Part shown: positions 1 to 64,000 of the stretch, one piece after another
How the letters are laid out: the number at the start of each line of letters is the position of its first letter
How positions within the stretch are numbered: the stretch's first letter is position 1
IMG/VR virus record: IMGVR_UViG_3300025133_009608
Location: 1-64,000 of that record
Length of the DNA: 64,000 nucleotides
Strand: one strand, 5' to 3'
Notes under the pieces: model-generated
What the model was told of the DNA's origin: nothing
What the model saw: the letters and a program-made list of their open reading frames with translations, nothing else
Database searches by the model: none
Made by a program: the position numbers and the translations under genes

Positions 1-496
1 CGGAGAGGAACATGTGAGTTGCGAAATCTGACGTGACTTCGGTATTAAATACTTCATAAAAAGACTTTGCGGTATCAAAGGTTCCGCCGAATGCCTTTTC
101 AAGATCCCACATCCCTCCTTCGAGTTCGCGGATTGGCTTCGAAAACGAGTCTAATGTGTTTATATATCCCTGTGCCGCCTCTGAGGCGATTCTTGTTGCC
201 GAGCCGAGAGCATTAACAACGTTCTTTACAAGACCGAGCGGGGCAGAAGCAGCACCGCCGAGGAGTGGAACCGCATTTATAATCGATTCCATCTGCCCGG
301 TTAAATCTGCTATGCTTTTTGCCGTGCCAGCAAGGCCATCAGTCAGAAGGCCGAGACCATTACCCGTCTCGATACCGGCCCTAGATAGGGATTCCAAGCT
401 CTGCGACAGTGTCTTTACGGCAGTAGTGGTCCTTGTCGCCGAAGCGCCCATGCCATCGATTACTTCGCCTGTAGTGGTCCCGCTTCCATCGGCCAT
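1..496 (-). CDS. Probable tape measure protein, N-terminal part (partial, not in ORF track)
   Basis: ATG at 496. The frame is open to the window edge by hand translation (MADGSGTTTGEVIDGMGASATRTTTAVKTLSQSLESLSRAG...). It is A/G/S/T-rich and helical, and directly follows the tube and chaperone genes. Confidence 0.6.
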   Translation of the reverse strand, partial: MADGSGTTTGEVIDGMGASATRTTTAVKTLSQSLESLSRAGIETGNGLGLLTDGLAGTAKSIADLTGQMESIINAVPLLGGAASAPLGLVKNVVNALGSATRIASEAAQGYINTLDSFSKPIRELEGGMWDLEKAFGGTFDTAKSFYEVFNTEVTSDFATHMFLS

Positions 497-498
497 AA

Positions 499-951
499 TT
501 AAATATCATCCTTTATTGCACTTAATAATCCAGAGATATCCCCCGGAAGAGAGGCCCCCCTTCCGGAGCGAACGCTCCTGTCATCATTTGCTTTTAAATT
601 AGTATTTTTATACTTATCCTTTATCGCGGCAATAAGATCACGATCAAATAATTCTCCATCTTCAATTCTTTGCTCGAACTCAGAATCAGAATCAAATCGG
701 CCATCCTCCATTGATTCGCGGCGTTCGCGAATTTCCTTGACTGCCTCACTATTCCAAAATGAGGCCAGATACTCAACCATGCTTAATTCGTCTTTTCTTT
801 TTTCTGAGCGATCTTCATTTAAGCTGGCTGCATACCACAGTCTTTGGGCTCGATTCATATTCCTGAATCTTTCGTCATCAACGGTGCACTGCCATATTTT
901 GCACAAATTCCAGCGGAGCCAACTATCTGACCCCTCTGTTATTTTTTTATT
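499..951 (-). CDS. Tail assembly chaperone, T-like frameshift extension
   Basis: ORF 499..906 has only a TTG start. Its frame is open up to 951 (TGA at 952-954) and is the -1 frame of the A7 run ending the upstream gene. Confidence 0.65.
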   Translation of the reverse strand, partial: NKKITEGSDSWLRWNLCKIWQCTVDDERFRNMNRAQRLWYAASLNEDRSEKRKDELSMVEYLASFWNSEAVKEIRERRESMEDGRFDSDSEFEQRIEDGELFDRDLIAAIKDKYKNTNLKANDDRSVRSGRGASLPGDISGLLSAIKDDI

Positions 952-5100: not shown

Positions 5101-5390
5101 TGTCCGAACAGAAGCGAGCCGTTCAAGCGGACCTCTGTTCTTCCGCTTACTATCGGATAATTCCTAAGTCGAAAAAACCTTCCCTCTCCAGAGCCTGTTG
5201 GGCTCGCGGCTTTACTTCCATCATTTCCCTCACCGTTTGCAGATGAAACGAGAACCTCCTCTCGAAGCCCCTCTCCCAGGATTGAGACGAGTCTAAGGCC
5301 ACCCGGAAGGGATACTCCCTTAGAAACGACGCGATCTCTGGCGAAAGTGCCGGGCTGAATGTAACCTGATATTCCTGGTATGTTAGCCAT
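2178..5390 (-). CDS. Contractile tail sheath protein with large inserted domains
   Basis: N-terminus MANIPGISGYIQPGTF. The C-terminal sheath domain (AAAAAGRLS...LTYKTLSGF...EISVMFIRD...INVFLRFTPAYPINYVFIDIEV) is typical of sheath proteins. Confidence 0.85.
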   Translation of the reverse strand: MANIPGISGYIQPGTFARDRVVSKGVSLPGGLRLVSILGEGLREEVLVSSANGEGNDGSKAASPTGSGEGRFFRLRNYPIVSGRTEVRLNGSLLFGQQDEIDSNSFDSKFDYRIDTETGVIELQTASIGDQGGSGFSAGAGNTGNGIIVEGVCSTVDNILAIKDGNTPSERWTAKCVSVTRDSTGDPIPGMAVFTLSGAVSGQILDDSGAPHLFHSSYYTSSAGAISGSAEPCLDGVIVASAVMHGSGVATLAADDSSATTTDTFILSGDLVTHGQAIVGDTFCVDGYVGVEIEDIEYSSEDNETTITLETDSFSIASAGDETISNWEIRASNLLIDDPTVSHDDVTGAPVSEGSFSSADEGKIVALCGDDAAGLYRVSKVTSSRRLRVHAIDDEDSGFPGAEGDADGLAESGKDFHMLETNGVLVMGIQEGTVPFEVGDRFYVDVDSRVLSTGDQLIAKYIAETDLNDPEFFTSANDLQTKHGAPGADNTLALGAQMAFENGAPGVLAIQCKPPVPRRTSVTLLEEVDANGTGGFSGCAAADCEVDDLMLNIPLPVSGLRAGKPDADSSVNIFIIRDGKETQLFPNKVGFYNSQLESEVMQLDFIGNSDYAFSYTIVNTGFDILGDGINGELGVDSATGVPAIYFKTLEFDFDADHVGSEIVVTSMESEAGTVFSSEDDIADEGASTVLTISSVSDDGKVYVSVGDMDLGMETFVDVQFFVRNPEDTTNVDAAILLHSDLVESGILQKGDGIRVSYIDENDADYFDSNWFDALEILEAHDAQIVVPLPRQSMSSIFRATVNHCENMSTIANRKERMALIGAQRGVTSAALIGQEEVAVEDIGIIEGIQGDDPEEILDGNTEDLVNYKLNDNYTSNRAVYFWPDEVVRNINGTNTMVHGFYMAAAAAGRLSATQNVAIPLTYKTLSGFSILRDKMLREVTANALGNVGATVVTPATGGGKILAGRTTSGTGFVEDEEISVMFIRDRVKQTLRQSLKGFLGKVQDENTNVLVGARVRGVMAALISQGLVSSYQDVSIERDKVDPRQINVFLRFTPAYPINYVFIDIEVGVL

Positions 5391-19972: not shown

Positions 19973-20029
19973 TCTGCGCCTCCCCTCTTGTGTTGTTATT
20001 TTACTACATTAATGTTAAATTATTTATCT

Positions 20030-21733
20030 TTAAATATTTGGAAGAACCCTATTGATAGCCACGGCCCCATAACTATAGCCGCCGAGATACTGAGACTGCA
20101 CCCATGAAGAGCCATTATCAGATGACCTAAAGATTCTATCGTCAGTAACTGCTATCCATATTCCGTCGTCATAGGCAACAAACGACGGGTCATTAGATAT
20201 ATTTCCTGAGCCAATATTTCCGTTTTGAACCCAAGTTGCCCCATTGTCCGTACTTGTATGATTCCAGCCGTAGCTGCTACCAACGGCAACCCATGTATTA
20301 TTTCCTCCATACTGGAAGTCCGAGGTCCAGGAAAGCTGGTCAACCGGGGCTATGGGCGTCCAATTGTTACTATCCAGATCTCCGGCCTGACACCGGAATC
20401 CGCCGCCAAGGCCAGTGAATACGATCCAGACGTCGTTCCCATACTGAACCTGCTTTCTATATTGCCGGCCCTCATAGCCTATTGGAATTGTATATGACAG
20501 CACCCACGTTGCGCCATCATCTATTGATTTAAAAATAGTATGAGAGTTTCCATCGTGGGAAACTGCAACCCAACTCCCAGCCCCATCAGTTGATAGCGAC
20601 TTATCTCCGATCGTAAGATTCGGCCCCGGAGGGCTGTACCCGGAAGTATCAATGAGAGTGTTTCCGCCATCTATAGATCTATCTATTCCTCCATCTCCAA
20701 TAAATACCCAAACGCCATTCCCATACTTAACGTCATTTGCGCCATTCGGATTTCCTGACCCCAAATATTCAATTTCAGACCAACTATTGATATCAGTGGG
20801 GTCAGAACTTCTAACGACCTCTCTTATGGACGAAGAATTATCGGGCTCTCTTGTGATGATCCATAAGTCATTATCACCCTCATCCTTTCCAAGTGCTATA
20901 CCCGTTATTTTCCCCTGATGCAGGGGACTGGGAATAGTATAGTTCGACCAAGAGGCTCCATCAGTAGCGTAAGAGATTTTGCCATAATGAGCTGCCGCGA
21001 CCCATAGCGGCGAATGAGACGATAAGTCTACCCAATTGCTCAACTCAGTGGTTTCCGCATTCTCACCAGACGCTCTTCCCGCGATCCACCTTCCAGTAGA
21101 TGCGTCAAAGTCGATATTGAATACCTGAGAGCTTCTAAGGCTAGCCGAAATATCTCCATCTTGCTTTGACACTCCCCAAGAAGAGGATGCTGCGGCAAGA
21201 GTTGTTCCTCCGGCTATGTCTCTGATGACAAACATAGTTCCCTGATCGGCTCCCAACGCAATATCTATGACGGCAGAGCCGGCACCAGCATCGAGACGCT
21301 CAGTTTCTGCTCCGCCGGCAGATGGGAAAGTATAGACCTTGCTGCCGGAGCTAACAATTCTATGATCATTCCCATTCCCACGAGAGACTCGGTTTACCTT
21401 ATCTCCATTTGGGTCTGTAAACATTAGAGTGAAGCCTGACGCAACGGCATTTGGAGCAACAAGCACCTCATATACCTTGCCTGCGGAGGTTCCCACAAGA
21501 AGCTTCCCATCTTCTACATAATCTAATGCAGTTGGAACTCCATCAATCCCTGTTGCGACTGAGTCATATGCAATATATGAATTCCAATCTTCCAATGCTG
21601 ATGACATGTATATCTTCGTGGTTTCTCCGTCTTTCTTTAGAAAGCAACACGAATATCCGCCTGCGGAATCTGTTCCGGCCTCAAACTCTGCTATGCTGCT
21701 AAGCTGCCCCTCGAATGTCCAGTCTCTACTCAT
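20030..21733 (-). CDS. BNR/Asp-box beta-propeller protein, paralog A
   Basis: SxDxGxTW boxes (KSIDDGATW, TSTDNGATW, RSSDNGSSW). The first ~246 aa are identical to paralog B. Confidence 0.75.
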   Translation of the reverse strand: MSRDWTFEGQLSSIAEFEAGTDSAGGYSCCFLKKDGETTKIYMSSALEDWNSYIAYDSVATGIDGVPTALDYVEDGKLLVGTSAGKVYEVLVAPNAVASGFTLMFTDPNGDKVNRVSRGNGNDHRIVSSGSKVYTFPSAGGAETERLDAGAGSAVIDIALGADQGTMFVIRDIAGGTTLAAASSSWGVSKQDGDISASLRSSQVFNIDFDASTGRWIAGRASGENAETTELSNWVDLSSHSPLWVAAAHYGKISYATDGASWSNYTIPSPLHQGKITGIALGKDEGDNDLWIITREPDNSSSIREVVRSSDPTDINSWSEIEYLGSGNPNGANDVKYGNGVWVFIGDGGIDRSIDGGNTLIDTSGYSPPGPNLTIGDKSLSTDGAGSWVAVSHDGNSHTIFKSIDDGATWVLSYTIPIGYEGRQYRKQVQYGNDVWIVFTGLGGGFRCQAGDLDSNNWTPIAPVDQLSWTSDFQYGGNNTWVAVGSSYGWNHTSTDNGATWVQNGNIGSGNISNDPSFVAYDDGIWIAVTDDRIFRSSDNGSSWVQSQYLGGYSYGAVAINRVLPNI

Positions 21734-21779
21734 GTTTTTTCCTAAATGAATATAGTATATCGTTATTAATTAGTATTAA
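20995..21779. repeat. 785-bp direct repeat, copy 1
   Basis: Matches 24610..25413 at a constant offset of 3615 nt up to a 19-bp tandem insertion in copy 2. Confidence 0.9.
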
Positions 21780-22350
21780 CTTTACGCAATTCTTCTGACC
21801 GCCTAATGTATTCGAAGCTCCCCACCCCAGATGACCCGGAACCCCCACTTTCCCACTCTGCGTTCATAATATGATAACTCGAGGCAGAGTGCAGCCAGCC
21901 AAGTGCATGACCAATTTCGTGCTCCAACACCCTCGGCCTTCTTATGTGCCGGTTCTGCATATATATTTTTGCATAGGCCATGGATCTTGTCCCCGTTGTT
22001 ACCGCGCACATTGTGCCGGCTATCTTTGAGAAGTCAAACCCACTCTCTGGCTCCATGATTAATATCTCTCCATCCTGCGGAACTCCCAGGCATGATGGCG
22101 ATGTATCATCAACTATGATATTCCCGAACCGATAACCAAGCCTCTCCCAATATCCTGTAGCCCGACGAACATCGACAGGCCGAACGGCTGAAGTATTACA
22201 TATTCTTATATCCGGCGGAGCCTCCCAGTAAAACTCCAGCTCCGGCCTGCCGTCAAATACTGTTCTTGAAAACTCAGCGGGGCGAGCGGGGAAGAAAAAT
22301 CCAGAAATAATTGGAATTTGAAGCAATAATATTAAAAACCCGACTCTCAT
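21766..22350 (-). CDS. Secreted matrixin-like (M10/metzincin) metalloprotease
   Basis: HEIGHALGWLH plus Met-turn HIMN; hydrophobic N-terminal signal. Confidence 0.8.
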   Translation of the reverse strand: MRVGFLILLLQIPIISGFFFPARPAEFSRTVFDGRPELEFYWEAPPDIRICNTSAVRPVDVRRATGYWERLGYRFGNIIVDDTSPSCLGVPQDGEILIMEPESGFDFSKIAGTMCAVTTGTRSMAYAKIYMQNRHIRRPRVLEHEIGHALGWLHSASSYHIMNAEWESGGSGSSGVGSFEYIRRSEELRKVNTN

Positions 22351-22377
22351 GCTCTAAGCTGCAATATTAGTCAATAA

Positions 22378-23286
22378 CTAAATAATCTTTCTCTGCCTGA
22401 GGTGCCTCATTCTCAATACAGCGGGACTTCCAGAGGACATATTTGTATATGTTCCAAAACTCTGAGGGCCAGGGCGGATAGAGTTTTTCATAAACTTCAA
22501 CCTCTCCCTGTACGATGTCATCCAATTTTGATACTGAGCCTGCAAAAAATCCCCAAGAGCAGGAGGCTGATACGATAGACCTCCGTCGGATATGGTAAAA
22601 TCTCTCCCCTTTTCAATTAAGGCCTGTGATGCCAGAGATACAACTAGCGCTCCCTCGACTATCGCATGTGAGAATGTTTTATATATAATCTCATCGCCAA
22701 ACGTGTACGATGTAAAAAATGGAGTCATATTAAACTCGGACAGCGCCTGACAGAGAAATGTCGCAAGAATCTCGTCGGAGAATACGTTGCAATCTTCCAT
22801 AATCATATCTCCATAACCATCCGTCATGAAGGACCCATAATCATCTCTTTTCGGCTTCTTGCCTCCGGATCGGGTCCTGGCTTTTAAATATTTGAGCAAA
22901 ACATTCAATCCAACTAATTCGGACTCTGAAAAATCGAACTCAACCTCATCGCCGAGGGTTACCGAGCCGGCAACTGCGGATGAATCATCAGTTACTAAAA
23001 ATTTAAACTCATTAGAAAGAGTGGCCTCATCTACAGTGGCGGTCCACACATCTGTCCAGAGCCCTTTGTCTGCCGCGCTGTCTACATCATAGGAATAAAC
23101 ATAAAGCCCAGTGTCCTCTCTAGAAACGCCGGTCGACGTAGAGGCCACTATTATATTCCCATCCGGATCTACTATCTTTATCTCAGGAGTTGAATCTGCA
23201 TCCATTTCTAAGCCATCTGGGCCGTAATATTGAATGCTTAATTCTACTTCTTCGTCTCGAATTGCTTTATTTCTGTTATTTGCCAT
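22378..23286 (-). CDS. Head-tail adaptor/connector with N-terminal Ig-like domain
   Basis: Ig-like N-terminus (EDTGLYVYSYDV). Helical C-terminal half ...EKGRDFTISDGGLSYQPP...YRERLKFMK; position among neck genes. Confidence 0.5.
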   Translation of the reverse strand: MANNRNKAIRDEEVELSIQYYGPDGLEMDADSTPEIKIVDPDGNIIVASTSTGVSREDTGLYVYSYDVDSAADKGLWTDVWTATVDEATLSNEFKFLVTDDSSAVAGSVTLGDEVEFDFSESELVGLNVLLKYLKARTRSGGKKPKRDDYGSFMTDGYGDMIMEDCNVFSDEILATFLCQALSEFNMTPFFTSYTFGDEIIYKTFSHAIVEGALVVSLASQALIEKGRDFTISDGGLSYQPPALGDFLQAQYQNWMTSYRERLKFMKNSIRPGPQSFGTYTNMSSGSPAVLRMRHLRQRKII

Positions 23287-23627
23287 TATCTCGACTCCGC
23301 TCTCGGGACGGTCTTTGAGCAGCCAGAAGAGCTATTTGCTGCAGATTTGACCGTAAAGTTTTCAATAGAAACATACGTCTCCCCGTCTAACTCTACTGAA
23401 ATTATAACTATATAATCCCCAACTGCCTTGGGAGAATATCTATACTCATAAGTGCCGAGGCCTGCGTCAACCTCAATCATGGGGTCCGGGAAGCCAGAAT
23501 CCGCCACACCACTTGGGCCAACTACCTTTTCAATCATTGGTGAGGATGTCGATATCGCAACCCCGCCATCTGTTATCTGAAACGGGATTCTTACCGTTGA
23601 GCCGAGATTATAACTTCCTGATGCCAT
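23286..23627 (-). CDS. Small Ig-like protein
   Basis: GTYEYRYSPKAVGDYIVII pattern, similar to the N-terminus of the downstream gene. Confidence 0.55.
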   Translation of the reverse strand: MASGSYNLGSTVRIPFQITDGGVAISTSSPMIEKVVGPSGVADSGFPDPMIEVDAGLGTYEYRYSPKAVGDYIVIISVELDGETYVSIENFTVKSAANSSSGCSKTVPRAESR

Positions 23628-23668
23628 TAGAGCCCCTGCCTCCAGTTAAATAACTAATATTAATATGC

Positions 23669-25348
23669 CTAAAACGGCTTGACTTTGTTGAACTCGACGG
23701 AGTGAAATGCTCTATTTGGATCCGAGTCATGAACGGAGGTCCACGTGGCACCAAGATCCGTTGATTTTGAGATATTGCCTGTCTTAGACACTGCCACAAT
23801 TGTTGAAACACCATCACTAGCTAATGAATATGCGATGTCGGTACCCCCGCCAACAGTTACAATATCTGAAACCTGTGTCCAGGATGAAGCATTGTTCGTT
23901 GACTTGAAAACATCTCGGCCGTCGCCAGATGCAAACCACGTGCTGCCTGTATGATGGCATAAACTATTGCATCGCTGGTTAGGTGTGAAATTGTCCGACC
24001 ATGAGGAGTCGTCTCTGGCGTTGTCGCTTGTAATATTTGATGCTTGTGCGACGTATATGGCATTAGTATAATATGTTGCGACCCAGAAACCATTTGCATA
24101 CTCTATTCCATGAACTTCATCACTGAATGGTATTGTTTTCTTCCAAGTAATTCCATCGTCCCAAGATTTCCATATACCGTCTGATCGCGTGCCCTGCATC
24201 CAGAAGCCGGCGCCATCTGTGGCGATGCATGTTGCTTCTGTCCCTGCATTCATTGTATGCTGCGTCCAGGTTGCTCCGTAATCGGTCGACCTCATAACTC
24301 CATTACCCGGATAGTTTCCTATGATGGCTGTTCCGTTCGCGCCATACTCAATGGCCTTTGATCTATGATCACCGGACATATTTATCATTGTCCACGAGTT
24401 TATGCCGGCAGTGGGGTCTGCGGAATACATAAATTCGCTTGGGGTTGTGTTGCTAGTCGAAGTCCACCTTGAAGCATACCACCGATCTCCGCCATTGGCA
24501 TCTTTTCCATATGACAAATCATAATAATCGTTAGTAGTGCCGGCAGGAGTTTGGTAGTTTGTCCAGGTCGACGCGTCAGTAGACGTCGCGACTGTCCCGT
24601 TAGTCCCTACCGCGACCCATAGCGGCGAATGAGACGATAAGTCTACCCAATTGCTCAACTCAGTGGTTTCCGCATTCTCACCAGACGCTCTTCCCGCGAT
24701 CCACCTTCCAGTAGATGCGTCAAAGTCGATATTGAATACCTGAGAGCTTCTAAGGCTAGCCGAAATATCTCCATCTTGCTTTGACACTCCCCAAGAAGAG
24801 GATGCTGCGGCAAGAGTTGTTCCTCCGGCTATGTCTCTGATGACAAACATAGTTCCCTGATCGGCTCCCAACGCAATATCTATGACGGCAGAGCCGGCAC
24901 CAGCATCGAGACGCTCAGTTTCTGCTCCGCCGGCAGATGGGAAAGTATAGACCTTGCTGCCGGAGCTAACAATTCTATGATCATTCCCATTCCCACGAGA
25001 GACTCGGTTTACCTTATCTCCATTTGGGTCTGTAAACATTAGAGTGAAGCCTGACGCAACGGCATTTGGAGCAACAAGCACCTCATATACCTTGCCTGCG
25101 GAGGTTCCCACAAGAAGCTTCCCATCTTCTACATAATCTAATGCAGTTGGAACTCCATCAATCCCTGTTGCGACTGAGTCATATGCAATATATGAATTCC
25201 AATCTTCCAATGCTGATGACATGTATATCTTCGTGGTTTCTCCGTCTTTCTTTAGAAAGCAACACGAATATCCGCCTGCGGAATCTGTTCCGGCCTCAAA
25301 CTCTGCTATGCTGCTAAGCTGCCCCTCGAATGTCCAGTCTCTACTCAT
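23669..25348 (-). CDS. BNR/Asp-box beta-propeller protein, paralog B
   Basis: RSTDYGATW, KSWDDGITW, KSTDLGATW. Identical 5' half to paralog A. Confidence 0.75.
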   Translation of the reverse strand: MSRDWTFEGQLSSIAEFEAGTDSAGGYSCCFLKKDGETTKIYMSSALEDWNSYIAYDSVATGIDGVPTALDYVEDGKLLVGTSAGKVYEVLVAPNAVASGFTLMFTDPNGDKVNRVSRGNGNDHRIVSSGSKVYTFPSAGGAETERLDAGAGSAVIDIALGADQGTMFVIRDIAGGTTLAAASSSWGVSKQDGDISASLRSSQVFNIDFDASTGRWIAGRASGENAETTELSNWVDLSSHSPLWVAVGTNGTVATSTDASTWTNYQTPAGTTNDYYDLSYGKDANGGDRWYASRWTSTSNTTPSEFMYSADPTAGINSWTMINMSGDHRSKAIEYGANGTAIIGNYPGNGVMRSTDYGATWTQHTMNAGTEATCIATDGAGFWMQGTRSDGIWKSWDDGITWKKTIPFSDEVHGIEYANGFWVATYYTNAIYVAQASNITSDNARDDSSWSDNFTPNQRCNSLCHHTGSTWFASGDGRDVFKSTNNASSWTQVSDIVTVGGGTDIAYSLASDGVSTIVAVSKTGNISKSTDLGATWTSVHDSDPNRAFHSVEFNKVKPF

Positions 25349-25413
25349 GTTTTTTCCTAAATGAATATAGTATATCTAAATGAATATAGTATATCGTTAT
25401 TAATTAGTATTAA
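24610..25413. repeat. Direct repeat, copy 2 (contains a 19-bp tandem duplication at 25357..25394)
   Basis: Direct comparison with 20995..21779. Confidence 0.9.
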
Positions 25414-26542
25414 TTTTACTGATTATTGCCAATGCACTATAAACTTCGGCCTCATAGGCTGTATAATTATTTGGATTATCAACACTATGTTTCCAAATAA
25501 ACTTTTTTGATTTTTCCTCGTATTCTTCTATATTTGCATCATGCTCTTTGACCGCCCTGAGCAGCGCATTAGCTCCGGCATCAGCATCAAAATCTGGATA
25601 AAAGTATCCAACGCCCTCGTCCCTCAGGAATTCTGAATTATGTACGAATGGATGTCCAAGATATAATGCATCAAGATATAAATAATTCAATCCATTCTCC
25701 CACTGGTGCGACAAAACAATATCAGTATACTTGCTAGAAAACATTGGGAACGAAAACCTGCCCTCAAATGAGACTATCCCGGCCCTCGTCGGTGACATTT
25801 TATTTGCCAATATTTTAAACTTCTTTAGCTCCCTAACGCTTGATGTATTTGTTATATATATTTCTTTTATTTGATCTTTCGCTCTAGGATATGCATTGTG
25901 CAATATTATCATTGGAATAATAGACATTTTTACAATATTTAAATTTGGCTCAAATACAGAAATTCTCTTATCTTTTCCGGGAGCATACCTTTTGATCGGC
26001 CTATTTTGGGAGCCAAAATATGAATCCACAAATAACGAGCTCCAAATATGAGGCATAACTATAAAGTTATTACAATTATAATCATACTTTAAAAAGCTCT
26101 TGCAAGTCTTAACGTGCTGTGGTGTGGTCCAGATGGCGTCGAAAAAAATCCCAGCGGCATTGCTCGTATACAACTCTCGCTTTACCATGGCTTCGATATT
26201 AAATACATATTTATTGCCCATTTCATACTTTACCAGCGCGCCGCCATTCGCCCGGACCTTTGTTGCAAATGATATTGATATTTGAACCAAAACCTCAATC
26301 AATACGTCGATCTTCCCTTCATATTTTTTTGCTTGCCGAACTCTATCCGCAGGAACACCATATTTTTCCCAATTACCCCTTATCGGCTCGGAGTTTTCTT
26401 CGGAAATAAAAAATACGTCGAATTCTGGAATTTTGCTTAATGTATTATATAAAAATATAGCATTTTGCCCTGCACCATTTGAAAACAGCGATTCATTAAG
26501 AGATATTTCATTTATAGTTAAAGCTATTTTAATTTTTTTCAC
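25400..26542 (-). CDS. DUF2827-family putative glycosyltransferase
   Basis: SLFSNGAGQNAIFL, FEPNLNIVKMSIIP, FEGRF, VLSHQWENGLNYLYLDALYLGHPFVHNS. Confidence 0.75.
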   Translation of the reverse strand: MKKIKIALTINEISLNESLFSNGAGQNAIFLYNTLSKIPEFDVFFISEENSEPIRGNWEKYGVPADRVRQAKKYEGKIDVLIEVLVQISISFATKVRANGGALVKYEMGNKYVFNIEAMVKRELYTSNAAGIFFDAIWTTPQHVKTCKSFLKYDYNCNNFIVMPHIWSSLFVDSYFGSQNRPIKRYAPGKDKRISVFEPNLNIVKMSIIPMIILHNAYPRAKDQIKEIYITNTSSVRELKKFKILANKMSPTRAGIVSFEGRFSFPMFSSKYTDIVLSHQWENGLNYLYLDALYLGHPFVHNSEFLRDEGVGYFYPDFDADAGANALLRAVKEHDANIEEYEEKSKKFIWKHSVDNPNNYTAYEAEVYSALAIISKINTN

Positions 26543-26543
26543 T

Positions 26544-27623
26544 TTAGAAGTGCCTTTGAATAAATGACTCTAATAATTGGGCATACCCATCTATATTCTT
26601 TTTATTATCTGGGCTAAAATCATATATTTTTTCAGCGTCCCTTTCCATCATTTCTTTGTAATTATCCGGATGGCTGCTGACAGCCTCTTTTAGCTTTTCC
26701 GCTCCCATTCCAATATTTATATCATTATAATAATATCCATGATCTTCAAAAGATTTACTATTGTGAATGAATGGAATGCCGAGATACATGGCCTCTAATT
26801 GGAGGTAATTTAATTCATTATAAAATTGATGGGATATAATAGAGCCAAACATGCGCTTTCGAAGCATGTGTGCAAGGGTCCACCTTCCCTCGAATGACAT
26901 CTCGCCTGCCGTCACTATATTTAGCATTTTCGCAAATTCTGCAAACCCATTATTATCCTTTAGCTTTTCTCCGCCGAGGACGTATGCCGAGATACCCTTG
27001 GAGTACTTATTGTAATAATCTTCACAAATTAGCATTGGAGCATGGCACATCTTAACAAAGTAGAGGTTGCTCTCCAAGATCCCCACGTGCTCGATGTTCC
27101 AGGATGGATCATATTTCAAATCTTTCTGCATTAGTGACTCCGGCGGCTGCCATACATATGGAGCTATCTCTATATTTGTCTTCCTCATTGTCCGCAGCGC
27201 TTCTCGCGAGTGCTCAAAATGTGGGCTTATCCAGGTCTCATGATGGCGCGCCCGAAAAAACGCAGGAGCTTCTGGCTTGTATATTGTTAAGGCAGAATTT
27301 ATAAGGAAATTATTTCCATATTCTATAACTATAATTTTCCCGCCCGATTTCTCAAATATATTACTTCCATTTACCGACAATGAGTGAGCGACTTCGATTA
27401 TGATATCAAAATCACCTATTGTCTCAGTAGTTAGAAGTTCGATCTCATTTTCTCCTAATTTTTTTCCACCAATCTTTGTCGACTCAGAAACTAAGATTAT
27501 ATCAAATCCAGCTTTTTTTAATATATCAAATAATGTTAAAACATTCTGAGATATTCCACTTGCAAATAGTCTCCCATTATCTTTTGTTGTTATTCCTATT
27601 TTAGTATTTTTTGATATATTCAT
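26544..27623 (-). CDS. DUF2827-family putative glycosyltransferase (second paralog)
   Basis: LFASGISQN, LESNLYFVKMCHAP, FEGRW, IISHQFYNELNYLQLEAMYLGIPFIHNS. Confidence 0.75.
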   Translation of the reverse strand: MNISKNTKIGITTKDNGRLFASGISQNVLTLFDILKKAGFDIILVSESTKIGGKKLGENEIELLTTETIGDFDIIIEVAHSLSVNGSNIFEKSGGKIIVIEYGNNFLINSALTIYKPEAPAFFRARHHETWISPHFEHSREALRTMRKTNIEIAPYVWQPPESLMQKDLKYDPSWNIEHVGILESNLYFVKMCHAPMLICEDYYNKYSKGISAYVLGGEKLKDNNGFAEFAKMLNIVTAGEMSFEGRWTLAHMLRKRMFGSIISHQFYNELNYLQLEAMYLGIPFIHNSKSFEDHGYYYNDINIGMGAEKLKEAVSSHPDNYKEMMERDAEKIYDFSPDNKKNIDGYAQLLESFIQRHF

Positions 27624-28642: not shown

Positions 28643-30721
28643 TTAACCCCACATTACAACGTAGTTCTCAACTGAATCTTCTAACTCTTCATCAAAGCGG
28701 ACGCGTCCAGTCGCGGCAACAACGTAGTCACCAGGATTCGCCACAAAGTTGAAGGCAGCAGCGGCTGCGTTATCGGCAAGCATACCTGCATTGGCATCTG
28801 TTTGGAGAATACCATTTCGGAATACACGAAGTTTTCCATAGAAATAGTTTCCATTAGCACCACCGAGATCAGTTCCAAGTCCTGCAATGTCGAACTCATC
28901 TTCGTCGGCACCATTTGGCCCTCCGTACACTGGAGCTCTCATCTCGTTCTTGGCGACCAAAGCGTCCATGTCACCCATGCGAATGTTCATAGAACTCTCA
29001 TCGTCATTGTGAACCTGAACAATGGATGCATCAGCAGAATCTCTAACTGACTCTTCAAGACTCAGACGAGTAGTGATAGAAAGATCACCAGAAGCGCGAT
29101 CGGTCTCTTCATTACCCAGACGAGTAGTAAGAGAAAGATCACCAGAGACTCTATTTGAAATCTCAGCGGTATCAACTGCAGCTAGAGAAACATCAGCAGA
29201 AGACCTGACTGACTCTTCCATACTCAGACGAGTAGTAAGAGAAAGATCACCAGAGACTCTATTTGAAATCTCAGCGGTATCAACTGCAGCTAGAGAAACA
29301 TCAGCAGAATCTCTAATTGACTCTTCGATACTCAGACGAGTAGTAAGAGAAAGATCACCAGAGACTCTATTTGAAACCTCATCGGTAAGGCCGCTCCCGG
29401 CGGCTGCAGCTAGAGAAGCATCAGCAGAAGACCTGACTGACTCTTCCATGCTCAGACGAGTAGTAAGAGAAAGATCACCAGAGACTCTATTTGAAATCTC
29501 AGCGGTATCAACTGCAGCTAGAGAAACATCAGCAGAAGACCTGACTGACTCTTCCATACTCAGACGAGTGGTAAGAGAAAGATCACCAGAGGTTCTCTCT
29601 GAAGCCTCGACGCTAACAAGTCCAGTGATTTCAGCGAGGTCTGCAATAATAACAAATCCCTTATCCTGGCCGGCCCAGCCGTTATAGTCATAGTTTCCAA
29701 CTCCAAGCCCAGTCATATATACGTACTGGTCCTTCTCCGCCTGAACGAAGTAGGCATCGCCTATGGACGCAGTCAAGTCAGCATTAACAGCCGCAATAGC
29801 AGCAGCTTGGTCGGCGACTGACGCCTTCCATTGGATACCAGAAGTAGTAGCGGTTTCCAGAGCAACAACACGTACCTGTAATGAGGCGTCCCCAGAGGAT
29901 CTATTCGACTCCTCACCGGAGATGCGAGTGCTCATAGAAATCTCATCGGCATTGTGAATCTGAACAATGGATGCATCAGCAGAATCTCTAACTGACTCTT
30001 CAAGACTCAGACGAGTAGTAAGAGAAAGATCACCAGAGGCTCTATTTGAAATCTCAGCGGTATCAACTGCAGCTAGAGAAACATCAGCAGAAGACCTGAC
30101 TGACTCTTCCATACTCAGACGAGTAGTAAGAGAAAGATCACCAGAGACTCTATTTGAAATCTCAGCGGTATCAACTGCAGCTAGAGAAACATCAGCAGAA
30201 TCTCTAATTGACTCTTCGATACTCAGACGAGTAGTAAGAGAAAGATCACCAGAGACTCTATTTGAAACCTCATCGGTAAGGCCGCTCCCGGCGGCTGCAG
30301 CTAGAGAGGCATCAGCAGAAGACCTGACTGACTCTTCCATGCTCAGACGAGTAGTAAGAGAAAGATCACCAGAGACTCTATTTGAAATCTCAGCGGTATC
30401 AACTGCAGCTAGAGAAACATCAGCAGAAGCGCTAACTGACTCTTCCATACTCAGACGAGCAGTAAGAGAAAGATCACCAGAGACTCTATTTGAAATCTCA
30501 GCGGTATCAACTGCAGCTAGAGAAACATCAGCAGAAGACCTGACTGACTCTTCCATACTCAGACGAGTAGTAAGAGAGCCATCGCCAGAATCAGCGTGTA
30601 GAATAGCGATGTCGATAGCCGGCTGAGCGGAAATCGCACCAGTGGATCCATCCTCTTGGAAGTGAGCGACTTTAAGCAAGGCTTGCTTAAAGACTATTTT
30701 TGTTTGTTTTGATATAGCCAT
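28643..30721 (-). CDS. Repeat-rich coiled-coil fibre protein (head or tail fibre)
   Basis: About 12 units of SGDLSLTTRLSMEESVRSSADVSLAAVDTAEISNRV in two arrays, separated by a globular WKASV domain. Likely start is the ATG at 30721 (MAISKQ) after AAGGA; the ORF track extends to 30760. Confidence 0.7.
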   Translation of the reverse strand: MAISKQTKIVFKQALLKVAHFQEDGSTGAISAQPAIDIAILHADSGDGSLTTRLSMEESVRSSADVSLAAVDTAEISNRVSGDLSLTARLSMEESVSASADVSLAAVDTAEISNRVSGDLSLTTRLSMEESVRSSADASLAAAAGSGLTDEVSNRVSGDLSLTTRLSIEESIRDSADVSLAAVDTAEISNRVSGDLSLTTRLSMEESVRSSADVSLAAVDTAEISNRASGDLSLTTRLSLEESVRDSADASIVQIHNADEISMSTRISGEESNRSSGDASLQVRVVALETATTSGIQWKASVADQAAAIAAVNADLTASIGDAYFVQAEKDQYVYMTGLGVGNYDYNGWAGQDKGFVIIADLAEITGLVSVEASERTSGDLSLTTRLSMEESVRSSADVSLAAVDTAEISNRVSGDLSLTTRLSMEESVRSSADASLAAAAGSGLTDEVSNRVSGDLSLTTRLSIEESIRDSADVSLAAVDTAEISNRVSGDLSLTTRLSMEESVRSSADVSLAAVDTAEISNRVSGDLSLTTRLGNEETDRASGDLSITTRLSLEESVRDSADASIVQVHNDDESSMNIRMGDMDALVAKNEMRAPVYGGPNGADEDEFDIAGLGTDLGGANGNYFYGKLRVFRNGILQTDANAGMLADNAAAAAFNFVANPGDYVVAATGRVRFDEELEDSVENYVVMWG
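29022..29590. repeat. Coding tandem repeat array (108/120-bp units), C-terminal array
   Basis: Repeated ctcagacgagtagtaagagaaagatcaccagag unit. Confidence 0.9.
29967..30590. repeat. Coding tandem repeat array (108/120-bp units), N-terminal array
   Basis: Same unit and the same order of variants as 29022..29590. Confidence 0.9.
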
Positions 30722-30939
30722 AATATTTTTATCCTTTTTTATTATGTTTAAAACCCACAAAGCCGTCTCGGCCTTATGGGTACTTAATTTAAACGGAACT
30801 TACTTTAAATATAAAATCTACAAATTTAAATTTGCAGCATATTATGTCTTTTCATTTTATTAATTAATATATAAAATGACTTATTAAATTTTATTTTGCA
30901 TCATCCTATTGATTATTATTATTTTAATCATCCTTGTGA

Positions 30940-32550: not shown

Positions 32551-33873
32551 TTAAGCGTTCTTTCTAATGCGGTCAAGCCCTCCCATGTAGGGTTGTAGAA
32601 CTTTTGGTACTAACACACTGCCGTCCGCCTGTTGATAGTTCTCCAAGATAGCGACTAATGTTCGACCTACGGCTAAACCTGAGCCGTTGATGGTATGACA
32701 GAACTGTAGTTTTTTCTTAGAACCATCATCTGATTCTGGGCGATACCTTATATTCATGCGCCTAGCCTGAAAGTCTCCGAACATTGAGCAGCTCGAAATC
32801 TCACGGTAGGCGTTCTGCCCAGGTAGCCAGACCTCTAAATCGTAGCAAAGGCTCGCGCTAAATCCGACATCTCCGCCACACAGCCTAACTACTCGGTAGT
32901 GTAGGCCGAGGGCCTGTAACAGCCCCTCTGCGTGGGAGGTGAGCAGCTCATGCTCATCCTTTGCTCGCTCAGGTGTAGTTACTCGTACCATCTCTACCTT
33001 ATGAAATTGGTGCTGGCGAATAAGACCACGGGCGTCCTTTCCGTAGGCGCCGGCCTCCGACCTAAAACATGGAGTAAAACAGGCCCATGCCTTTGGTAGC
33101 TCCTCTTCTTTAACGATTTCCCCTCGGAGAAGGTTGGTAACGGGTACCTCTGCGGTGGGAATTAAGAAAGCATCTTGTCCATTCATCTGGCCCGCGAGCT
33201 TGAAGGCTTCATCTTCAAATTTTGGCAACTGTCCCGTGCCTTCCATTGTCGTGCGCCAAACAACATAGGGAACCATCACCTCGTTGTAGCCATTCTTATC
33301 TGTATGGGTGTCCATAAAGAAGTTTATAAGGGCGCGCTCCATTCGAGCAGCAGCTCGGTGAAGAACAGCAAATCTAGCCCCCGAAATCTTGGCCGAGGCT
33401 TCTTGGTCCAATATTCCTAGCTTTGTAGCCAAGACGTCGTGAGCCATTGGCTCGAAATCCATCTCCGGCTTTGAGCCCCATTGTCGTACCTCTACATTGT
33501 CGTCTTCTGCGGCGCCTGCCGGGACGTCTTCGTGAAGTAGGTTTGGTAGCTTCATTAATAACATTAGCCGCTCTGCTTCGACTATGCTTAGCTCGTTTTC
33601 TGCAGCTACTGTACGGTCAGATTCCAGCTTAACCTTGTCTCTTAGCCTCTTTGCTCCGTCGGCATTGCTTGCTTTTATCATTTCTCCTATTTGAGACGAT
33701 AACCTATTCTTTGCAGCCCTAGAAGCTTCAACTATTAAAATAAGATCTCTTCGCCTGTTAGAGAGAGAATTTATTTTCCCCGGAATATTGAGAGCTTCCC
33801 TGTCCGCGTTTCGACGGGACAGGGTTTCTATTATGAAATCTTCATTCTCAGCTATAAACTTTGCGTCTAACAT
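32551..33873 (-). CDS. serS: Seryl-tRNA synthetase (bacterial type)
   Basis: N-terminal coiled-coil arm, GTGQLPKF, LIPTAEVP, CFRSEAG...RGLIRQHQFHKVE, YREISSCS..GDFQARR, HTINGSGLAVGRTLVAILENYQ. Confidence 0.97.
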   Translation of the reverse strand: MLDAKFIAENEDFIIETLSRRNADREALNIPGKINSLSNRRRDLILIVEASRAAKNRLSSQIGEMIKASNADGAKRLRDKVKLESDRTVAAENELSIVEAERLMLLMKLPNLLHEDVPAGAAEDDNVEVRQWGSKPEMDFEPMAHDVLATKLGILDQEASAKISGARFAVLHRAAARMERALINFFMDTHTDKNGYNEVMVPYVVWRTTMEGTGQLPKFEDEAFKLAGQMNGQDAFLIPTAEVPVTNLLRGEIVKEEELPKAWACFTPCFRSEAGAYGKDARGLIRQHQFHKVEMVRVTTPERAKDEHELLTSHAEGLLQALGLHYRVVRLCGGDVGFSASLCYDLEVWLPGQNAYREISSCSMFGDFQARRMNIRYRPESDDGSKKKLQFCHTINGSGLAVGRTLVAILENYQQADGSVLVPKVLQPYMGGLDRIRKNA

Positions 33874-34005: not shown

Positions 34006-35028
34006 TTATGCAGAAACAAGGCCGGTAGCAACACCACGTGGGTTGACGATACCGCAACCAACGATCTCAGAGATAACCCAACCAAGCTTAAGCTGCTTGG
34101 GCTCATCGGCGGGAAGCACCTCAATGTCCTGACGGACAGGCATCACGCCAACAAACTCTGGATCGGCGCAAGCAAATGCGCGACCAGCAGGAACAACCTT
34201 CGAAACAACAATGTCAGCACCGAAGATGTGACCGTAAAGGCCAGTCTGAAGAAGCTCACGCTGAGTTACAGGATCGACCTGAGAAGCACCAGCGCCACCA
34301 GCAGACTCCCAATTGAGCATATCAGTGAATTCGTTAATGTTCATGAAGTACTTGCTAGTAACAAGGTCCCAGCGATCGATTTGACGCTTAAGATTCAGCA
34401 TTCCCTGCTTGGAAAGCTCATCGGTAGTGGTTCCGTTATCAAGGGTTTGAGAAGCATTCTCGCCACCGAGGTTCGAATCACCAGCAAACTCAAGAGCAGA
34501 AAATACGTTAGCATCCTCTTGCGCCTGAATCTCTTGGCGGGCCTTTTGCTGAGCACGATCGATTACATTGAATCGACGACGCTTAACTTCGGCAATACGT
34601 ACCGTTGGGTTTGAAACAATTTCAAACTCAGGGATAGTTACTCTGTCGCCAAATACGCGTGACTCAGGAGCAGAGCCGTTGCTAGAAACAACAACAGCTG
34701 CTACGTCGATATCACGATCGTATACGGGAAGAGCGCCCTGTGGAAGAGGATCGACAACGAGCGCCTTGCGGGAAACTCCTTGATAATCCAGGTTGCGACG
34801 AATTGGGTTAGCCATAGCTTGGCCCAAAGCGATTTTGCCTTCCTGAGTCATAAGCGCCTGCTTAATCATCTCGTCCTTCTGGCCGTCATTCAGGCTCGCA
34901 GCAGTTGCGTGAGCCGAGCTTGATGGCTGAAGGTCTTCAATGATAGAAGCATACTTTACGATTTCAGAGAGAGCCTCTTGGACTCCGGAGGCGTTAATTT
35001 CACCATTTGTATTAAATAAGTTTGACAT
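34006..35028 (-). CDS. Major capsid protein (HK97 fold)
   Basis: 340 aa with strong codon bias and a terminator downstream. IRRNLDYQGVSRKALVVDPLPQG...NPTVRIAEV...IDRAQQKARQEIQAQED...GIVNPRGVA; downstream of the protease/scaffold. Confidence 0.85.
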   Translation of the reverse strand: MSNLFNTNGEINASGVQEALSEIVKYASIIEDLQPSSSAHATAASLNDGQKDEMIKQALMTQEGKIALGQAMANPIRRNLDYQGVSRKALVVDPLPQGALPVYDRDIDVAAVVVSSNGSAPESRVFGDRVTIPEFEIVSNPTVRIAEVKRRRFNVIDRAQQKARQEIQAQEDANVFSALEFAGDSNLGGENASQTLDNGTTTDELSKQGMLNLKRQIDRWDLVTSKYFMNINEFTDMLNWESAGGAGASQVDPVTQRELLQTGLYGHIFGADIVVSKVVPAGRAFACADPEFVGVMPVRQDIEVLPADEPKQLKLGWVISEIVGCGIVNPRGVATGLVSA

Positions 35029-63487: not shown

Positions 63488-64000
63488 TTATTGCCCCATA
63501 GCCATAATTAGCGGATTTTCTTCTATCTCAGCATCATCGGGGGTGTTATCAGCCGCTGGCGCCGGGCCTCCTCCGAGGTATATTTCTCTTATTTTCTCTT
63601 GGGTTGAATTCATAAAAGGTTTATTTTTAGAAAACGACTCCAAGGCGGCGTCTCTTCCTCTGATTTTTTCTCCATCTATCATATAGTTTTGCGTATTTGG
63701 CCTTTCAATCAAGTCATACTTTAGGGCCAATCCAAATATCTCCTCCTCTATATTAACCACTCCCTTTAGGTACTCAACGAAATATTCTGCTTTTTGGAAT
63801 GGCTTTCCGACTTTATTTTTCTCAACCTTTGCTCGAACTCTGTGCCCAATTCTTGCATCATTCTTATCTTTAATAAGATTATCGGCACCAAACATTGGAG
63901 CCATATTGATCATAAGACTACAGGCATGCTTGAGCGCCTTGCCTCCCGGGCTAGTTGCCGGGTCTCCAAAGTGCTGTCCGAGATTTACTCTTACCTGGTT
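63488..64000 (-). CDS. recA: RecA/UvsX recombinase, C-terminal part (partial)
   Basis: Open to the window edge: NQVRVNLGQHFGDPATSPGGKALKHACS, then VEKNKVGKPFQKAE. Confidence 0.9.
   Translation of the reverse strand, partial: NQVRVNLGQHFGDPATSPGGKALKHACSLMINMAPMFGADNLIKDKNDARIGHRVRAKVEKNKVGKPFQKAEYFVEYLKGVVNIEEEIFGLALKYDLIERPNTQNYMIDGEKIRGRDAALESFSKNKPFMNSTQEKIREIYLGGGPAPAADNTPDDAEIEENPLIMAMGQ

What the first reader, a model, noticed from the sequence alone, without database searches (positions are those of the whole stretch)
20030..25413. Constant-N / variable-C paralog pair from a 785-bp exact duplication
Seen: 20995..21779 equals 24610..25413, covering promoter motif, RBS, the last codons of the upstream genes (both end NTN*) and ~246 codons. 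Identity stops abruptly at LSSHSPLWVA, after which the two BNR propeller domains are only distantly similar. Zero drift implies a very recent event or ongoing gene conversion. The repeats are direct and flank the adaptor gene, so excision should be lethal. Inference: a shared virion-docking module displaying alternative glycan-binding propellers, possibly swapped by RecA-type recombination.
Basis: partly seen in the sequence, partly recalled or inferred. Interest (0 to 1): 0.65.

Follow-up and report, generated by a model that had tools for sequence, protein, structure and literature searches.

The report
Gene-converted twin-propeller paralogs in jumbo phage
Two old, diverged copies of a two-propeller surface-protein gene in a marine jumbo phage have had their first 0.8 kb (promoter region plus the whole first propeller) made identical by recent recombination between the copies, an ordinary but unusually clean case of gene conversion that ends exactly at a module junction.

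Summary
The repeat is real. 20995-21761 equals 24610-25376 exactly (767 nt). Copy 2 then carries a 19-nt tandem duplication, and identity continues to 21779/25413, so the copies are 785 and 804 nt. Independent assemblies and unitig graphs from three runs show a two-in/two-out repeat at about twice the flanking depth.

It is not a fresh duplication. A related phage has the same two genes in the same places, diverged along their whole length (N halves 47%, C halves 36% identical). In the window the upstream gene's N half is of the downstream type. The shared upstream-gene tail and intergenic region are native to the upstream locus. So there were at least two conversion events, in opposite directions.

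Both halves are beta-propellers. The N module (residues 1 to about 236) folds alone and elsewhere sits at the C-terminal end of giant LamG-rich phage structural proteins. The C module begins at PLWVA, where stand-alone homologues in other phages begin. The break therefore lies four residues inside the C module, on its most conserved motif.

The "virion-docking" and "adaptor" labels are unverified. One contig shows the deletion product, but this may be an assembler shortcut. This is a new member of a known kind, of moderate interest.

The parts
20995..21785 (-). Repeat copy 1, at the downstream locus. It is exact over 20995-21779 and has one mismatch at 21780 before similarity ends at 21785. 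It covers the last 6 codons of P0003, the intergenic region with the AGGA ribosome-binding site, and codons 1-246 of P0001.
24610..25419 (-). Repeat copy 2, at the upstream locus. It has the same content plus one extra 19-nt unit. It covers the last 6 codons of P0006 (DUF2827), the intergenic region, and codons 1-246 of P0002.
25357..25394 (-). A 19-nt tandem duplication (two units) in the leader of copy 2. It is the only difference between the two repeat copies.
20030..21733 (-). P0001, the downstream two-propeller gene (567 aa). It is the ortholog of P0007 in the related phage: 75% identical in the N part and 61% in the C part.
23669..25348 (-). P0002, the upstream two-propeller gene (559 aa). 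Its C module is of the 'up' type (44% identical to the relative's upstream gene, 62% to the stand-alone P0013). Its N module is of the 'down' type.
21026..21733 (-). Coding region of the N propeller (residues 1 to about 236) in P0001. The identical region in P0002 is 24641-25348.
   Evidence: Model from alignment A2 has pLDDT 92.7 and pTM 0.87. Fold matches are generic beta-propellers, Z 15-18. Homologues end at query residue about 235.
20996..21016 (-). Junction motif H-S-P-L-W-V-A (residues 240-246), the last identical codons. The copy-2 equivalent is 24611-24631. It forms the first strand of the C propeller and is the most conserved patch of that family.
   Evidence: (W244 and V245 invariant)
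20033..21007 (-). Asp-box (BNR-type) C propeller of P0001, 'down' type.
23672..24622 (-). Asp-box (BNR-type) C propeller of P0002, 'up' type. It is related to stand-alone propeller genes of other phages.
21766..22350 (-). P0003, 194 aa, with a hydrophobic N terminus and an HExxHxxGxxH matrixin-like motif. Its last codons were overwritten by the repeat.
22378..23286 (-). P0004, 302 aa. This is a core gene of the clade, with more than 300 protein clusters at 60-95% identity and the same length. Its function is unknown and the 'adaptor' label is unverified.
23286..23627 (-). P0005, 113 aa. It is conserved next to P0004 in 11 of 15 related loci.
25400..26542 (-). P0006, a DUF2827 protein. Its native 3' end (…NTN*) and trailing intergenic DNA supplied the 5' tip of the repeat.
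63488..64000 (-). 3' part of a RecA-family recombinase gene. The 397-aa open frame runs on beyond the window.

Best explanation
P0001 and P0002 are ancient paralogs. Each encodes a small N-terminal beta-propeller fused to an Asp-box (BNR-type) C-terminal propeller. They sit on either side of a conserved core gene pair in the structural region of a 317-kb marine jumbo phage.

In this lineage, homologous recombination between the two copies (non-reciprocal gene conversion) made the 5' 0.79 kb identical. At least two events of opposite polarity are required:
- The N-propeller coding part of the downstream gene replaced that of the upstream gene.
- The tail of the upstream neighbour gene plus the leader, native to the upstream locus, was copied in front of the downstream gene. 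In doing so it rewrote the last codons of P0003.

The simplest order is an older down-to-up event followed by a recent up-to-down event spanning the whole tract. That order accounts for the complete identity.

The tract ends at the conserved junction motif HSPLWVA on one side. On the other side it ends at a short ACTAAT-like microhomology at the end of the upstream genes. The only change since then is a 19-nt slippage duplication in one leader.

The consequence, which is inferred, is that both genes now share one leader and one N propeller while keeping different C propellers.

The likely role, inferred and not shown, is a virion-surface adhesin or fibre accessory protein with two ligand-binding propellers.
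For: The repeat is real:
- It is present with 100% identity in contigs from several independent samples (L005, L015-L020).
- Logan unitigs in three runs break exactly at the four repeat edges. The repeat unitig has about twice the depth of its neighbours: 66.8 against 32-36, 19.6 against 10-14, and 9.4 against 4.8-6.2. The loop depth is close to the flank depth. The tool warns that contig depth is not a copy number.

The pair is old and was once diverged:
- The related phage (L006-L008) has the same gene order. Its two paralogs are 46.9% (N) and 36.1% (C) identical, while flanking proteins are 71-95% identical to the window's.

Polarity of the events:
- The window's N module is 74.8% identical to the relative's downstream N and 52.7% to its upstream N, consistently from codon 16 to 240.
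- The relative's DUF2827 gene also ends ...NTN* followed by the same 17 nt, whereas its P0003 ortholog ends ...STNISN*.

The break lies at a module boundary:
- Stand-alone homologues start their homology at L243.
- N-module homologues end at about residue 235.
- The N module alone folds with pLDDT 92.7, with residues 242-246 disordered.
- The full model matches tandem double-propeller proteins.

A recombinase is available: a RecA-family gene is present in the genome.

A fibre or adhesin context is suggested:
- Stand-alone C propellers directly follow genes that hit tail-fibre PHROGs.
- The N propeller ends a 1596-aa LamG protein between neck and sheath genes of a T4-like phage.
- The window pair lies between the major head protein and the tail sheath.
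Against: - Only one relative with the same synteny was found, so polarity rests on a single outgroup.
- The 'up-like' signal in the first 20 codons is weak: 77% against 68% nucleotide identity over 60 nt.
- No raw or long reads were available, so physical linkage across each 767-nt copy rests on assemblies and unitig depth.
- P0002's C module is closer to the stand-alone gene P0013 (62%) than to the relative's upstream gene (44%). Horizontal replacement has therefore also acted at this locus and could be part of the same history.
- Nothing here shows that the proteins are in the virion or what they bind. Pfam and PHROGs give no significant hit for P0001, and only a weak unknown-function hit for P0002.
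Confidence: 0.8

Rival explanations
1. Module grafting rather than conversion of an old N part. The upstream gene was rebuilt when a foreign stand-alone propeller gene (P0013-like) entered at the HSPLWVA motif. In the same or a linked event it was joined to a copy of the downstream gene's 5' part.
For: - The P0002 C module groups with stand-alone P0013 at 100/100 support and 62% identity, against only 44% to the relative's upstream gene.
- The relative's upstream C module is nested among stand-alone genes, including one in a T4-like phage. This module clearly moves between phages at this junction.
Against: - Gene position, length (559 against 560 aa) and the native upstream leader are conserved with the relative. 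The locus was therefore occupied throughout.
- At 62% identity, P0013 is not a recent donor, while the N identity is 100%. The two changes are not obviously simultaneous.
- This model still needs a copy of the downstream N part, which is a conversion step.
Confidence: 0.1
2. Assembly artefact. Two strains or alleles were stitched into one contig, or a repeat was wrongly resolved, so that the two loci do not really share an identical N part in one genome.
For: - The 767-nt repeat is longer than short reads.
- One contig from another sample (L004) joins the repeat differently, in the deletion form.
- No raw reads could be laid.
Against: - All four junctions are seen in several independent assemblies and three runs.
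- The repeat unitig has about twice the flank depth, and the loop has flank-level depth.
- k141 contigs carry 141 to 767 nt of the repeat joined to each unique side.
- No alternative N sequence for the upstream locus exists in any searched collection.
- The two-locus layout is confirmed without any repeat in the relative.
Confidence: 0.03
3. A functional recombination switch. The direct repeats are kept identical because recombination between them regularly makes a 3,615-bp deletion variant that lacks P0002's C part, P0005, P0004 and P0003, or makes amplified variants, as a population-level strategy.
For: - Contig L004 (13,095 bp, 100% identical to the window on both sides) has exactly the deletion junction, including the copy-2 leader.
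- Two MEGAHIT contigs of 3,756 bp (3,615 + 141) behave as cycles of the repeat unit.
- The phage has a RecA-family gene.
Against: - The same sample also holds the loop genes on a separate contig (L019). That is what an assembler that skips a loop would produce.
- Loop depth is not lower than flank depth in the three runs.
- The deleted segment holds P0004, a core gene conserved in all related loci.
- Cycle contigs are the expected graph artefact of any direct repeat.
Confidence: 0.05

Closest known systems
Concerted evolution of paralogs by gene conversion (for example the bacterial tufA/tufB pair and rRNA operons; cited from my own knowledge)
   Same: Two paralogs in one genome are identical over a sharply bounded tract, synonymous sites and non-coding leader included. 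The same pair is diverged in a relative. Gene trees of the converted and unconverted parts disagree. A RecA-family recombinase is present.
   Different: Only the 5' module is homogenised. The tract is a mosaic of both loci and overran the 3' end of an unrelated neighbour gene. The host is a virus, and the two copies flank essential-looking genes as direct repeats.
Modular phage receptor-binding proteins with a shared N-terminal part and exchangeable C-terminal domains (T-even long tail fibres, multi-tailspike phages such as CBA120 or K1-5 types; cited from my own knowledge)
   Same: Two genes in the structural region share an N part and carry different C-terminal binding-type domains. The exchange point lies at a conserved junction motif. 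The C module is horizontally mobile between unrelated phages.
   Different: There is no fibre or spike fold, meaning no beta-helix, coiled coil or triple beta-spiral. Both parts are propellers. No homology to known anchor domains was found. The shared N module is a C-terminal tip domain in other proteins. Virion attachment was not shown.
Tandem double beta-propeller proteins of the Asp-box/BNR kind (GH74 xyloglucanases, Sortilin-Vps10, PSII_BNR/Ycf48-like)
   Same: The full-length model's best Foldseek matches are GH74 two-propeller enzymes (E about 1e-15). The C module has four Asp-boxes. Homologues carry faint PF14870, PF15902, PF13088 and PF02012 hits.
   Different: TM-scores are low (about 0.3) and identity is 10-14%. 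The N propeller has no Asp-boxes and is much smaller, at about 236 aa. Pfam gives no significant hit for P0001 or P0002 themselves. No catalytic residues were examined.
Programmed tail-fibre variation systems: invertible segments (Mu Gin, P1 Cin) and diversity-generating retroelements
   Same: They also produce alternative C-terminal binding ends on a constant N part.
   Different: The repeats here are direct and 767 nt long. There are no inverted repeats, no serine invertase, no reverse transcriptase and no adenine-specific mismatches, since the copies are identical.

Membership tests
Gene conversion / concerted evolution between paralogs | Paralogs are identical within the genome but diverged from each other in a related genome | tested here: met
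   The window pair is 100% identical over 246 codons. The related phage's pair is 46.9% identical over the same part.
Gene conversion / concerted evolution between paralogs | Abrupt tract borders, with identity at synonymous and non-coding sites | tested here: met
   Nucleotide identity goes from 100% to 40-50% within a few codons. The leader and the neighbouring gene's tail are included.
Gene conversion / concerted evolution between paralogs | Phylogenetic incongruence between the converted and unconverted parts | tested here: met
   The N part of P0002 is 'down'-type (75% against 53%), while its C part is 'up'-type.
Gene conversion / concerted evolution between paralogs | Both copies are physically present in one molecule | tested here: inconclusive
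   This is supported by a 316-kb contig, independent contigs and twofold unitig depth. No read spans a whole copy.
Asp-box (BNR) beta-propeller | Repeated S-x-D-x-G-x-T-W motifs | tested here: met
   There are four per C module and none in the N module.
Asp-box (BNR) beta-propeller | Propeller fold | tested here: met
   The AlphaFold model has pLDDT 78. Its best matches are GH74, LRP6 and BT4673 double propellers.
Asp-box (BNR) beta-propeller | Pfam BNR, Sortilin-Vps10 or PSII_BNR score above the curated cut-off | tested here: not met
   There are no Pfam hits at E of 0.01 or better for P0001 or P0002. Only faint precomputed hits exist in homologues.
Phage receptor-binding / tail-fibre protein with an N-terminal virion anchor | Homology to a known fibre, spike or anchor family | tested here: not met
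   PHROGs gives none for P0001 and a weak unknown-function family for P0002. tblastn against 50,697 phage records finds no match.
Phage receptor-binding / tail-fibre protein with an N-terminal virion anchor | Encoded in the tail or structural module, next to fibre genes | tested here: inconclusive
   The pair lies between the major head protein and the tail sheath. Stand-alone C-module homologues follow tail-fibre-like genes in other phages. No fibre gene was recognised next to the window pair.
Phage receptor-binding / tail-fibre protein with an N-terminal virion anchor | The N part binds the virion and the C part binds the host surface | not testable with these tools
   This needs virion proteomics, cryo-EM or binding assays. 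The N module's usual C-terminal position in other proteins argues for caution.
Head-tail adaptor (claimed for the 302-aa gene between the repeats) | Sequence or profile similarity to a known adaptor or neck family | tested here: not met
   Pfam gives none. The PHROGs hits are unknown-function families. PDB searches by sequence and by profile give nothing. The protein atlas returns only 'hypothetical protein' clusters.
Invertible-segment or DGR tail-fibre diversification | Inverted repeats plus an invertase, or a template/variable repeat pair plus a reverse transcriptase | tested here: not met
   There are no inverted repeats, no Resolvase and no RVT_1.

The most novel reading that the evidence does not exclude
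The identity may be maintained rather than accidental. Repeated bidirectional conversion would keep one leader and one N propeller on two adhesins whose C propellers are drawn from a horizontally mobile pool. Both would then be made at the same time and level and compete for the same partner, giving mixed virions with two specificities. The same repeats would continually shed a defined 3.6-kb deletion variant, the L004 form. This would be a recombination-driven, module-level bet-hedging device in a jumbo phage that needs no dedicated invertase or retroelement.
Probability: 0.1. Interest if true: 0.6.

Novelty: new member of a known kind. Interest (0 to 1): 0.35.

Why it matters
This is a clean natural example of how phage surface-protein genes are edited module by module. 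A related genome preserves the 'before' state. The tract borders can be read to the base: a conserved junction motif on one side and a microhomology inside a neighbour gene on the other. The same junction is also the point where the C propeller is exchanged between very different marine phages, including T4-like and jumbo types.

It also defines two uncharacterised, portable propeller modules of marine phages and gives their boundaries. That is useful for annotation and for choosing constructs for binding or structural work.

It does not reveal a new mechanism.

Tried and rejected
Searches that gave nothing useful:
- Megablast and tblastn of the region and of P0001 against 50,697 phage records found no match. 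The same was true for P0004.
- A scan of viral contigs with the N module found no relatives.
- Pfam gave nothing for P0001, P0002, P0004 or P0005.
- PDB sequence searches for P0001 and P0004, and a profile of the P0004 family, gave nothing.
- The atlas search of P0004 returned only unnamed viral clusters.
- Pfam on the variable genes flanking the core pair in relatives was uninformative.
- One literature search found no directly relevant paper.

- The sigma-70 promoter scan found no site in the shared leader, and counts were no higher than in shuffles.
- The leader motif is not a recurrent genome-wide motif.
- The genes preceding stand-alone propellers (279 and 414 aa) are not homologous to the N module. 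The idea of a 'split' version of the same protein was therefore dropped.

Mechanisms rejected:
- DGR and invertible-segment mechanisms.

Leads that turned out to be artefacts:
- The two mismatches in loop contig L019 looked like a strain marker. They lie 11-12 nt from the contig end, at a branch with another phage's homologue.
- P0054, which looked like a stand-alone N module, is cut by its contig end.

Not attempted:
- No complex prediction was run, because no binding claim is made.

Full report
**Where the window lies**

The window is the first 64 kb of a 316,664-bp IMG/VR virus record, which is linear and estimated 94% complete. Its GC content is 43%, and almost all genes in the window are on the minus strand. 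The major head protein (34006-35028) is 51% identical to gp27 of Bacillus phage G. A tail sheath lies at 2178-5390. This is therefore a marine jumbo myovirus distantly related to phage G. The runs holding it are marine metagenomes.

**Checking the observation**

- A base-by-base comparison shows that 20995-21761 equals 24610-25376 exactly, which is 767 nt at an offset of 3615.
- Copy 2 then has a 19-nt tandem duplication (25357-25375 and 25376-25394).
- Identity resumes after it: 21762-21779 equals 25396-25413. One mismatch and five more matches follow, to 21785/25419.
- This is the longest repeat in the genome.
- It covers codons 1-246 of P0001 (20030-21733, 567 aa) and of P0002 (23669-25348, 559 aa), the AGGA ribosome-binding site, the leader, and the last codons of the two unrelated upstream genes. 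Those genes are P0003, ending KVNTN*, and P0006, ending KINTN*.
- After ...HSPLWVA the proteins are 29.6% identical, and the DNA is 40-50% identical.

**Whether the repeat is an assembly artefact**

- P0001 and the genes between the copies are found on contigs from several other samples and assemblers. All are 100% identical to the window inside the repeat.
- Two MEGAHIT contigs are 3,756 bp long, which is 3,615 + 141. That is what a direct repeat gives at k = 141.
- I laid Logan contigs of three runs on 20000-25500. The unitigs break exactly at the four repeat edges, with 30-nt overlaps.
- The repeat unitig has about twice the depth of its neighbours: 66.8 against 32-36, 19.6 against 10-14, and 9.4 against 4.8-6.2. 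The 2.8-kb loop between the copies has the same depth as the outer flanks.
- The tool warns that contig depth is not a copy number, so I treat this as supportive rather than conclusive. No raw or long reads were available.

**What made the repeat**

The word search found P0007, which is 67% identical to P0001. Its contigs L006-L008, from three samples, show a related phage with the same order: DUF2827, DUF2827, a 560-aa gene, 114, 302 and 195-aa genes, then a 564-aa gene. Flanking proteins are 71-95% identical to the window's.

In that phage the two paralogs are diverged throughout, with N parts 46.9% and C parts 36.1% identical. The pair is therefore old, and the window's identity is secondary.

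The evidence on direction is as follows:
- The window's N part is 74.8% identical to the relative's downstream gene and 52.7% to its upstream gene. This holds in every 30-residue window from about residue 16 to 240. The downstream gene's N part therefore overwrote the upstream gene's.
- The 5' tip tells the opposite story. The relative's DUF2827 gene also ends ...NTN* and is followed by the same 17 nt. The relative's ortholog of P0003 ends ...STNISN*, followed by unrelated DNA.
- Homology between P0003 and its ortholog stops at ...TTGCG, exactly where similarity to the P0006 tail begins.
- The first 20 codons are also slightly closer to the 'up' type, at 77% against 68% nucleotide identity. 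This signal is weak.

The repeat is therefore a mosaic of both loci, and at least two conversion events with opposite polarity are needed. The simplest order is an older down-to-up event followed by a recent up-to-down event that spanned the whole 0.79 kb. That order would explain why nothing but one slippage indel distinguishes the copies.

A RecA-family gene lies at the edge of the window.

**Whether the break is at a domain boundary**

Three lines of evidence agree.

1. *Stand-alone C-module homologues.* A search with P0002 residues 240-559 found many stand-alone proteins of 334-361 aa. Their homology begins at L243 of P0002, which is residue 44 of P0013, at 62% identity. They carry their own N-peptide of about 20-40 residues, followed by H-S/D-P-L-W-V-A.

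2. *N-module homologues.* An exhaustive search with residues 1-250 found 38 representatives. In most, the match ends at query residue about 235 and lies at the extreme C terminus of proteins of 800-2083 aa. These proteins are rich in Laminin_G_3 and Ig-like domains. One sits between gp13-like neck genes and the sheath of a T4-like phage.

3. *Structure models.*
   - The full-length AlphaFold model (pLDDT 78) is all-beta. Its best matches are tandem double-propeller proteins such as GH74, LRP6 and BT4673.
   - The N module alone, modelled with 34 homologues, gives pLDDT 92.7 and pTM 0.87, with residues 242-246 disordered. It matches generic beta-propellers with Z of 15-18, including a five-bladed fragment.

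So the N module is residues 1 to about 236, the linker is 237-242, and the C module begins at 243. The identity ends at 246/247, which is four residues into the C module. That point lies on the most conserved patch of the family: W244 and V245 are invariant in 24 sequences. The recombination resolved in the last stretch where donor and recipient were still alike.

**The C module is mobile**

- In a maximum-likelihood tree, the 'down' C modules of the window and the relative group with P0008, a full-length homologue from a third phage that sits next to RecA and exonuclease genes.
- The window's 'up' C module groups with the stand-alone P0013 at 100/100 support.
- The relative's 'up' C module is nested among stand-alone genes.
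- One of those stand-alone genes, P0021, is a lone gene in a T4-like phage with Portal_T4 and Terminase_6N.
- Stand-alone propellers in two jumbo-phage contigs directly follow genes that hit tail-fibre PHROGs, with start and stop codons overlapping.

**The genes between the copies**

- P0004 (302 aa) belongs to a very large and tightly conserved family: more than 300 clusters at 60-95% identity, nearly all exactly 302 aa long, on contigs of up to 380 kb.
- In 15 related viral loci P0004 is present, and in 11 of them P0005 is seen beside it. None has the two-propeller genes in the flanking positions, which hold different genes in different phages.
- The propeller genes therefore occupy variable slots on either side of a core pair.
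- I could not attach any function to P0004. 'Adaptor' remains a guess, although loss of a core gene is plausibly harmful.
- One 13,095-bp contig from another sample (L004) has exactly the recombination product: P0006, the copy-2 leader, the repeat, then the P0001 C part. It is 100% identical to the window on both sides.
- The same sample also holds the loop genes on a separate contig (L019), and loop depth is not reduced in the runs laid. I therefore regard L004 as more likely an assembler skipping a loop than a common natural variant. It cannot be excluded.

**Function**

Nothing here shows what the proteins do. My best inference is that they are virion-surface adhesin-like proteins with two binding-type propellers. 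This rests on three observations:
- the pair's position between head and sheath genes;
- the fibre-gene neighbourhood of C-module homologues;
- the tip position of N-module homologues in giant structural proteins.

**Other mechanisms considered**

Invertible segments and diversity-generating retroelements are excluded. There are no inverted repeats, no invertase, no reverse transcriptase and no adenine-biased differences.

**Verdict**

This is a real, well-bounded and recent gene-conversion tract between ancient paralogs, ending on a module junction that also serves horizontal module exchange. It is a new member of a known kind and of moderate interest.

Noticed in passing
window 1-700 and genome 315962-316664 (outside the window): The two ends of the 316.7-kb record are direct repeats of about 700 nt at only 88% identity. 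This could be a terminal repeat assembled from two strains, or a paralogous gene at both ends. The record is classed as linear.
   Followed up: no
window 28643-30760 (-): A 705-aa protein with a Bactofilin-domain hit, built from many tandem copies of a unit of about 108 nt at 85-97% identity. Contigs in other samples break inside it (L004 starts there). Relatives have 776-814-aa versions.
   Followed up: partly
window 25400-26542 and 26544-27623 (-): Two adjacent DUF2827 genes (380 and 359 aa; E of 4e-93 and 2e-62) lie in the structural region of the phage. They are conserved in the related phage but absent from more distant relatives.
   Followed up: partly
window 21766-22350 (-): P0003 is a 194-aa protein with a hydrophobic N terminus and an HEIGHALGWLH zinc-metallopeptidase motif. 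Its Peptidase_M10 hit is weak and below the cut-off. It is only 71% conserved with the relative, and its C-terminal tail was rewritten by the conversion tract.
   Followed up: partly
window 32551-33873 (-): A full-length seryl-tRNA synthetase gene (tRNA-synt_2b plus Seryl_tRNA_N) lies next to the major head protein gene.
   Followed up: no
window 23676-23720: In run X1, a low-depth contig (885 nt, depth 5.3 against 36) shares only the last 15 codons or so of P0002, with two mismatches, and then diverges. It probably comes from another phage's propeller gene with the conserved ...NKVKPF end. Contig L019 ends at the same branch.
   Followed up: partly
L021-L026 and L035 (other phages): The full-length homologue P0008 and the stand-alone propeller P0016 are each followed by a gene of the same unknown family, phrog_36119 (E about 1e-42), in two different phages. 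This may be a partner gene. No such gene follows the window's copies.
   Followed up: no
L027, L028, L036 (other phages): Marine jumbo and T4-like phage contigs that carry these propeller modules also carry a PrkA, DUF444 and SpoVR gene trio next to them.
   Followed up: no
genome 90768-91365 (outside the window): An exact 307-nt tandem repeat. There are also several 50-90-nt repeats at 180-191 kb.
   Followed up: no
window 22378-23627 (-): P0005 (113 aa) and the first 110 residues or so of P0004 look alike by eye: both are beta-rich with Y-x-Y-x-Y-type strands, and P0004 gives weak immunoglobulin-fold hits. They may be duplicated Ig-like domains.
   Followed up: no
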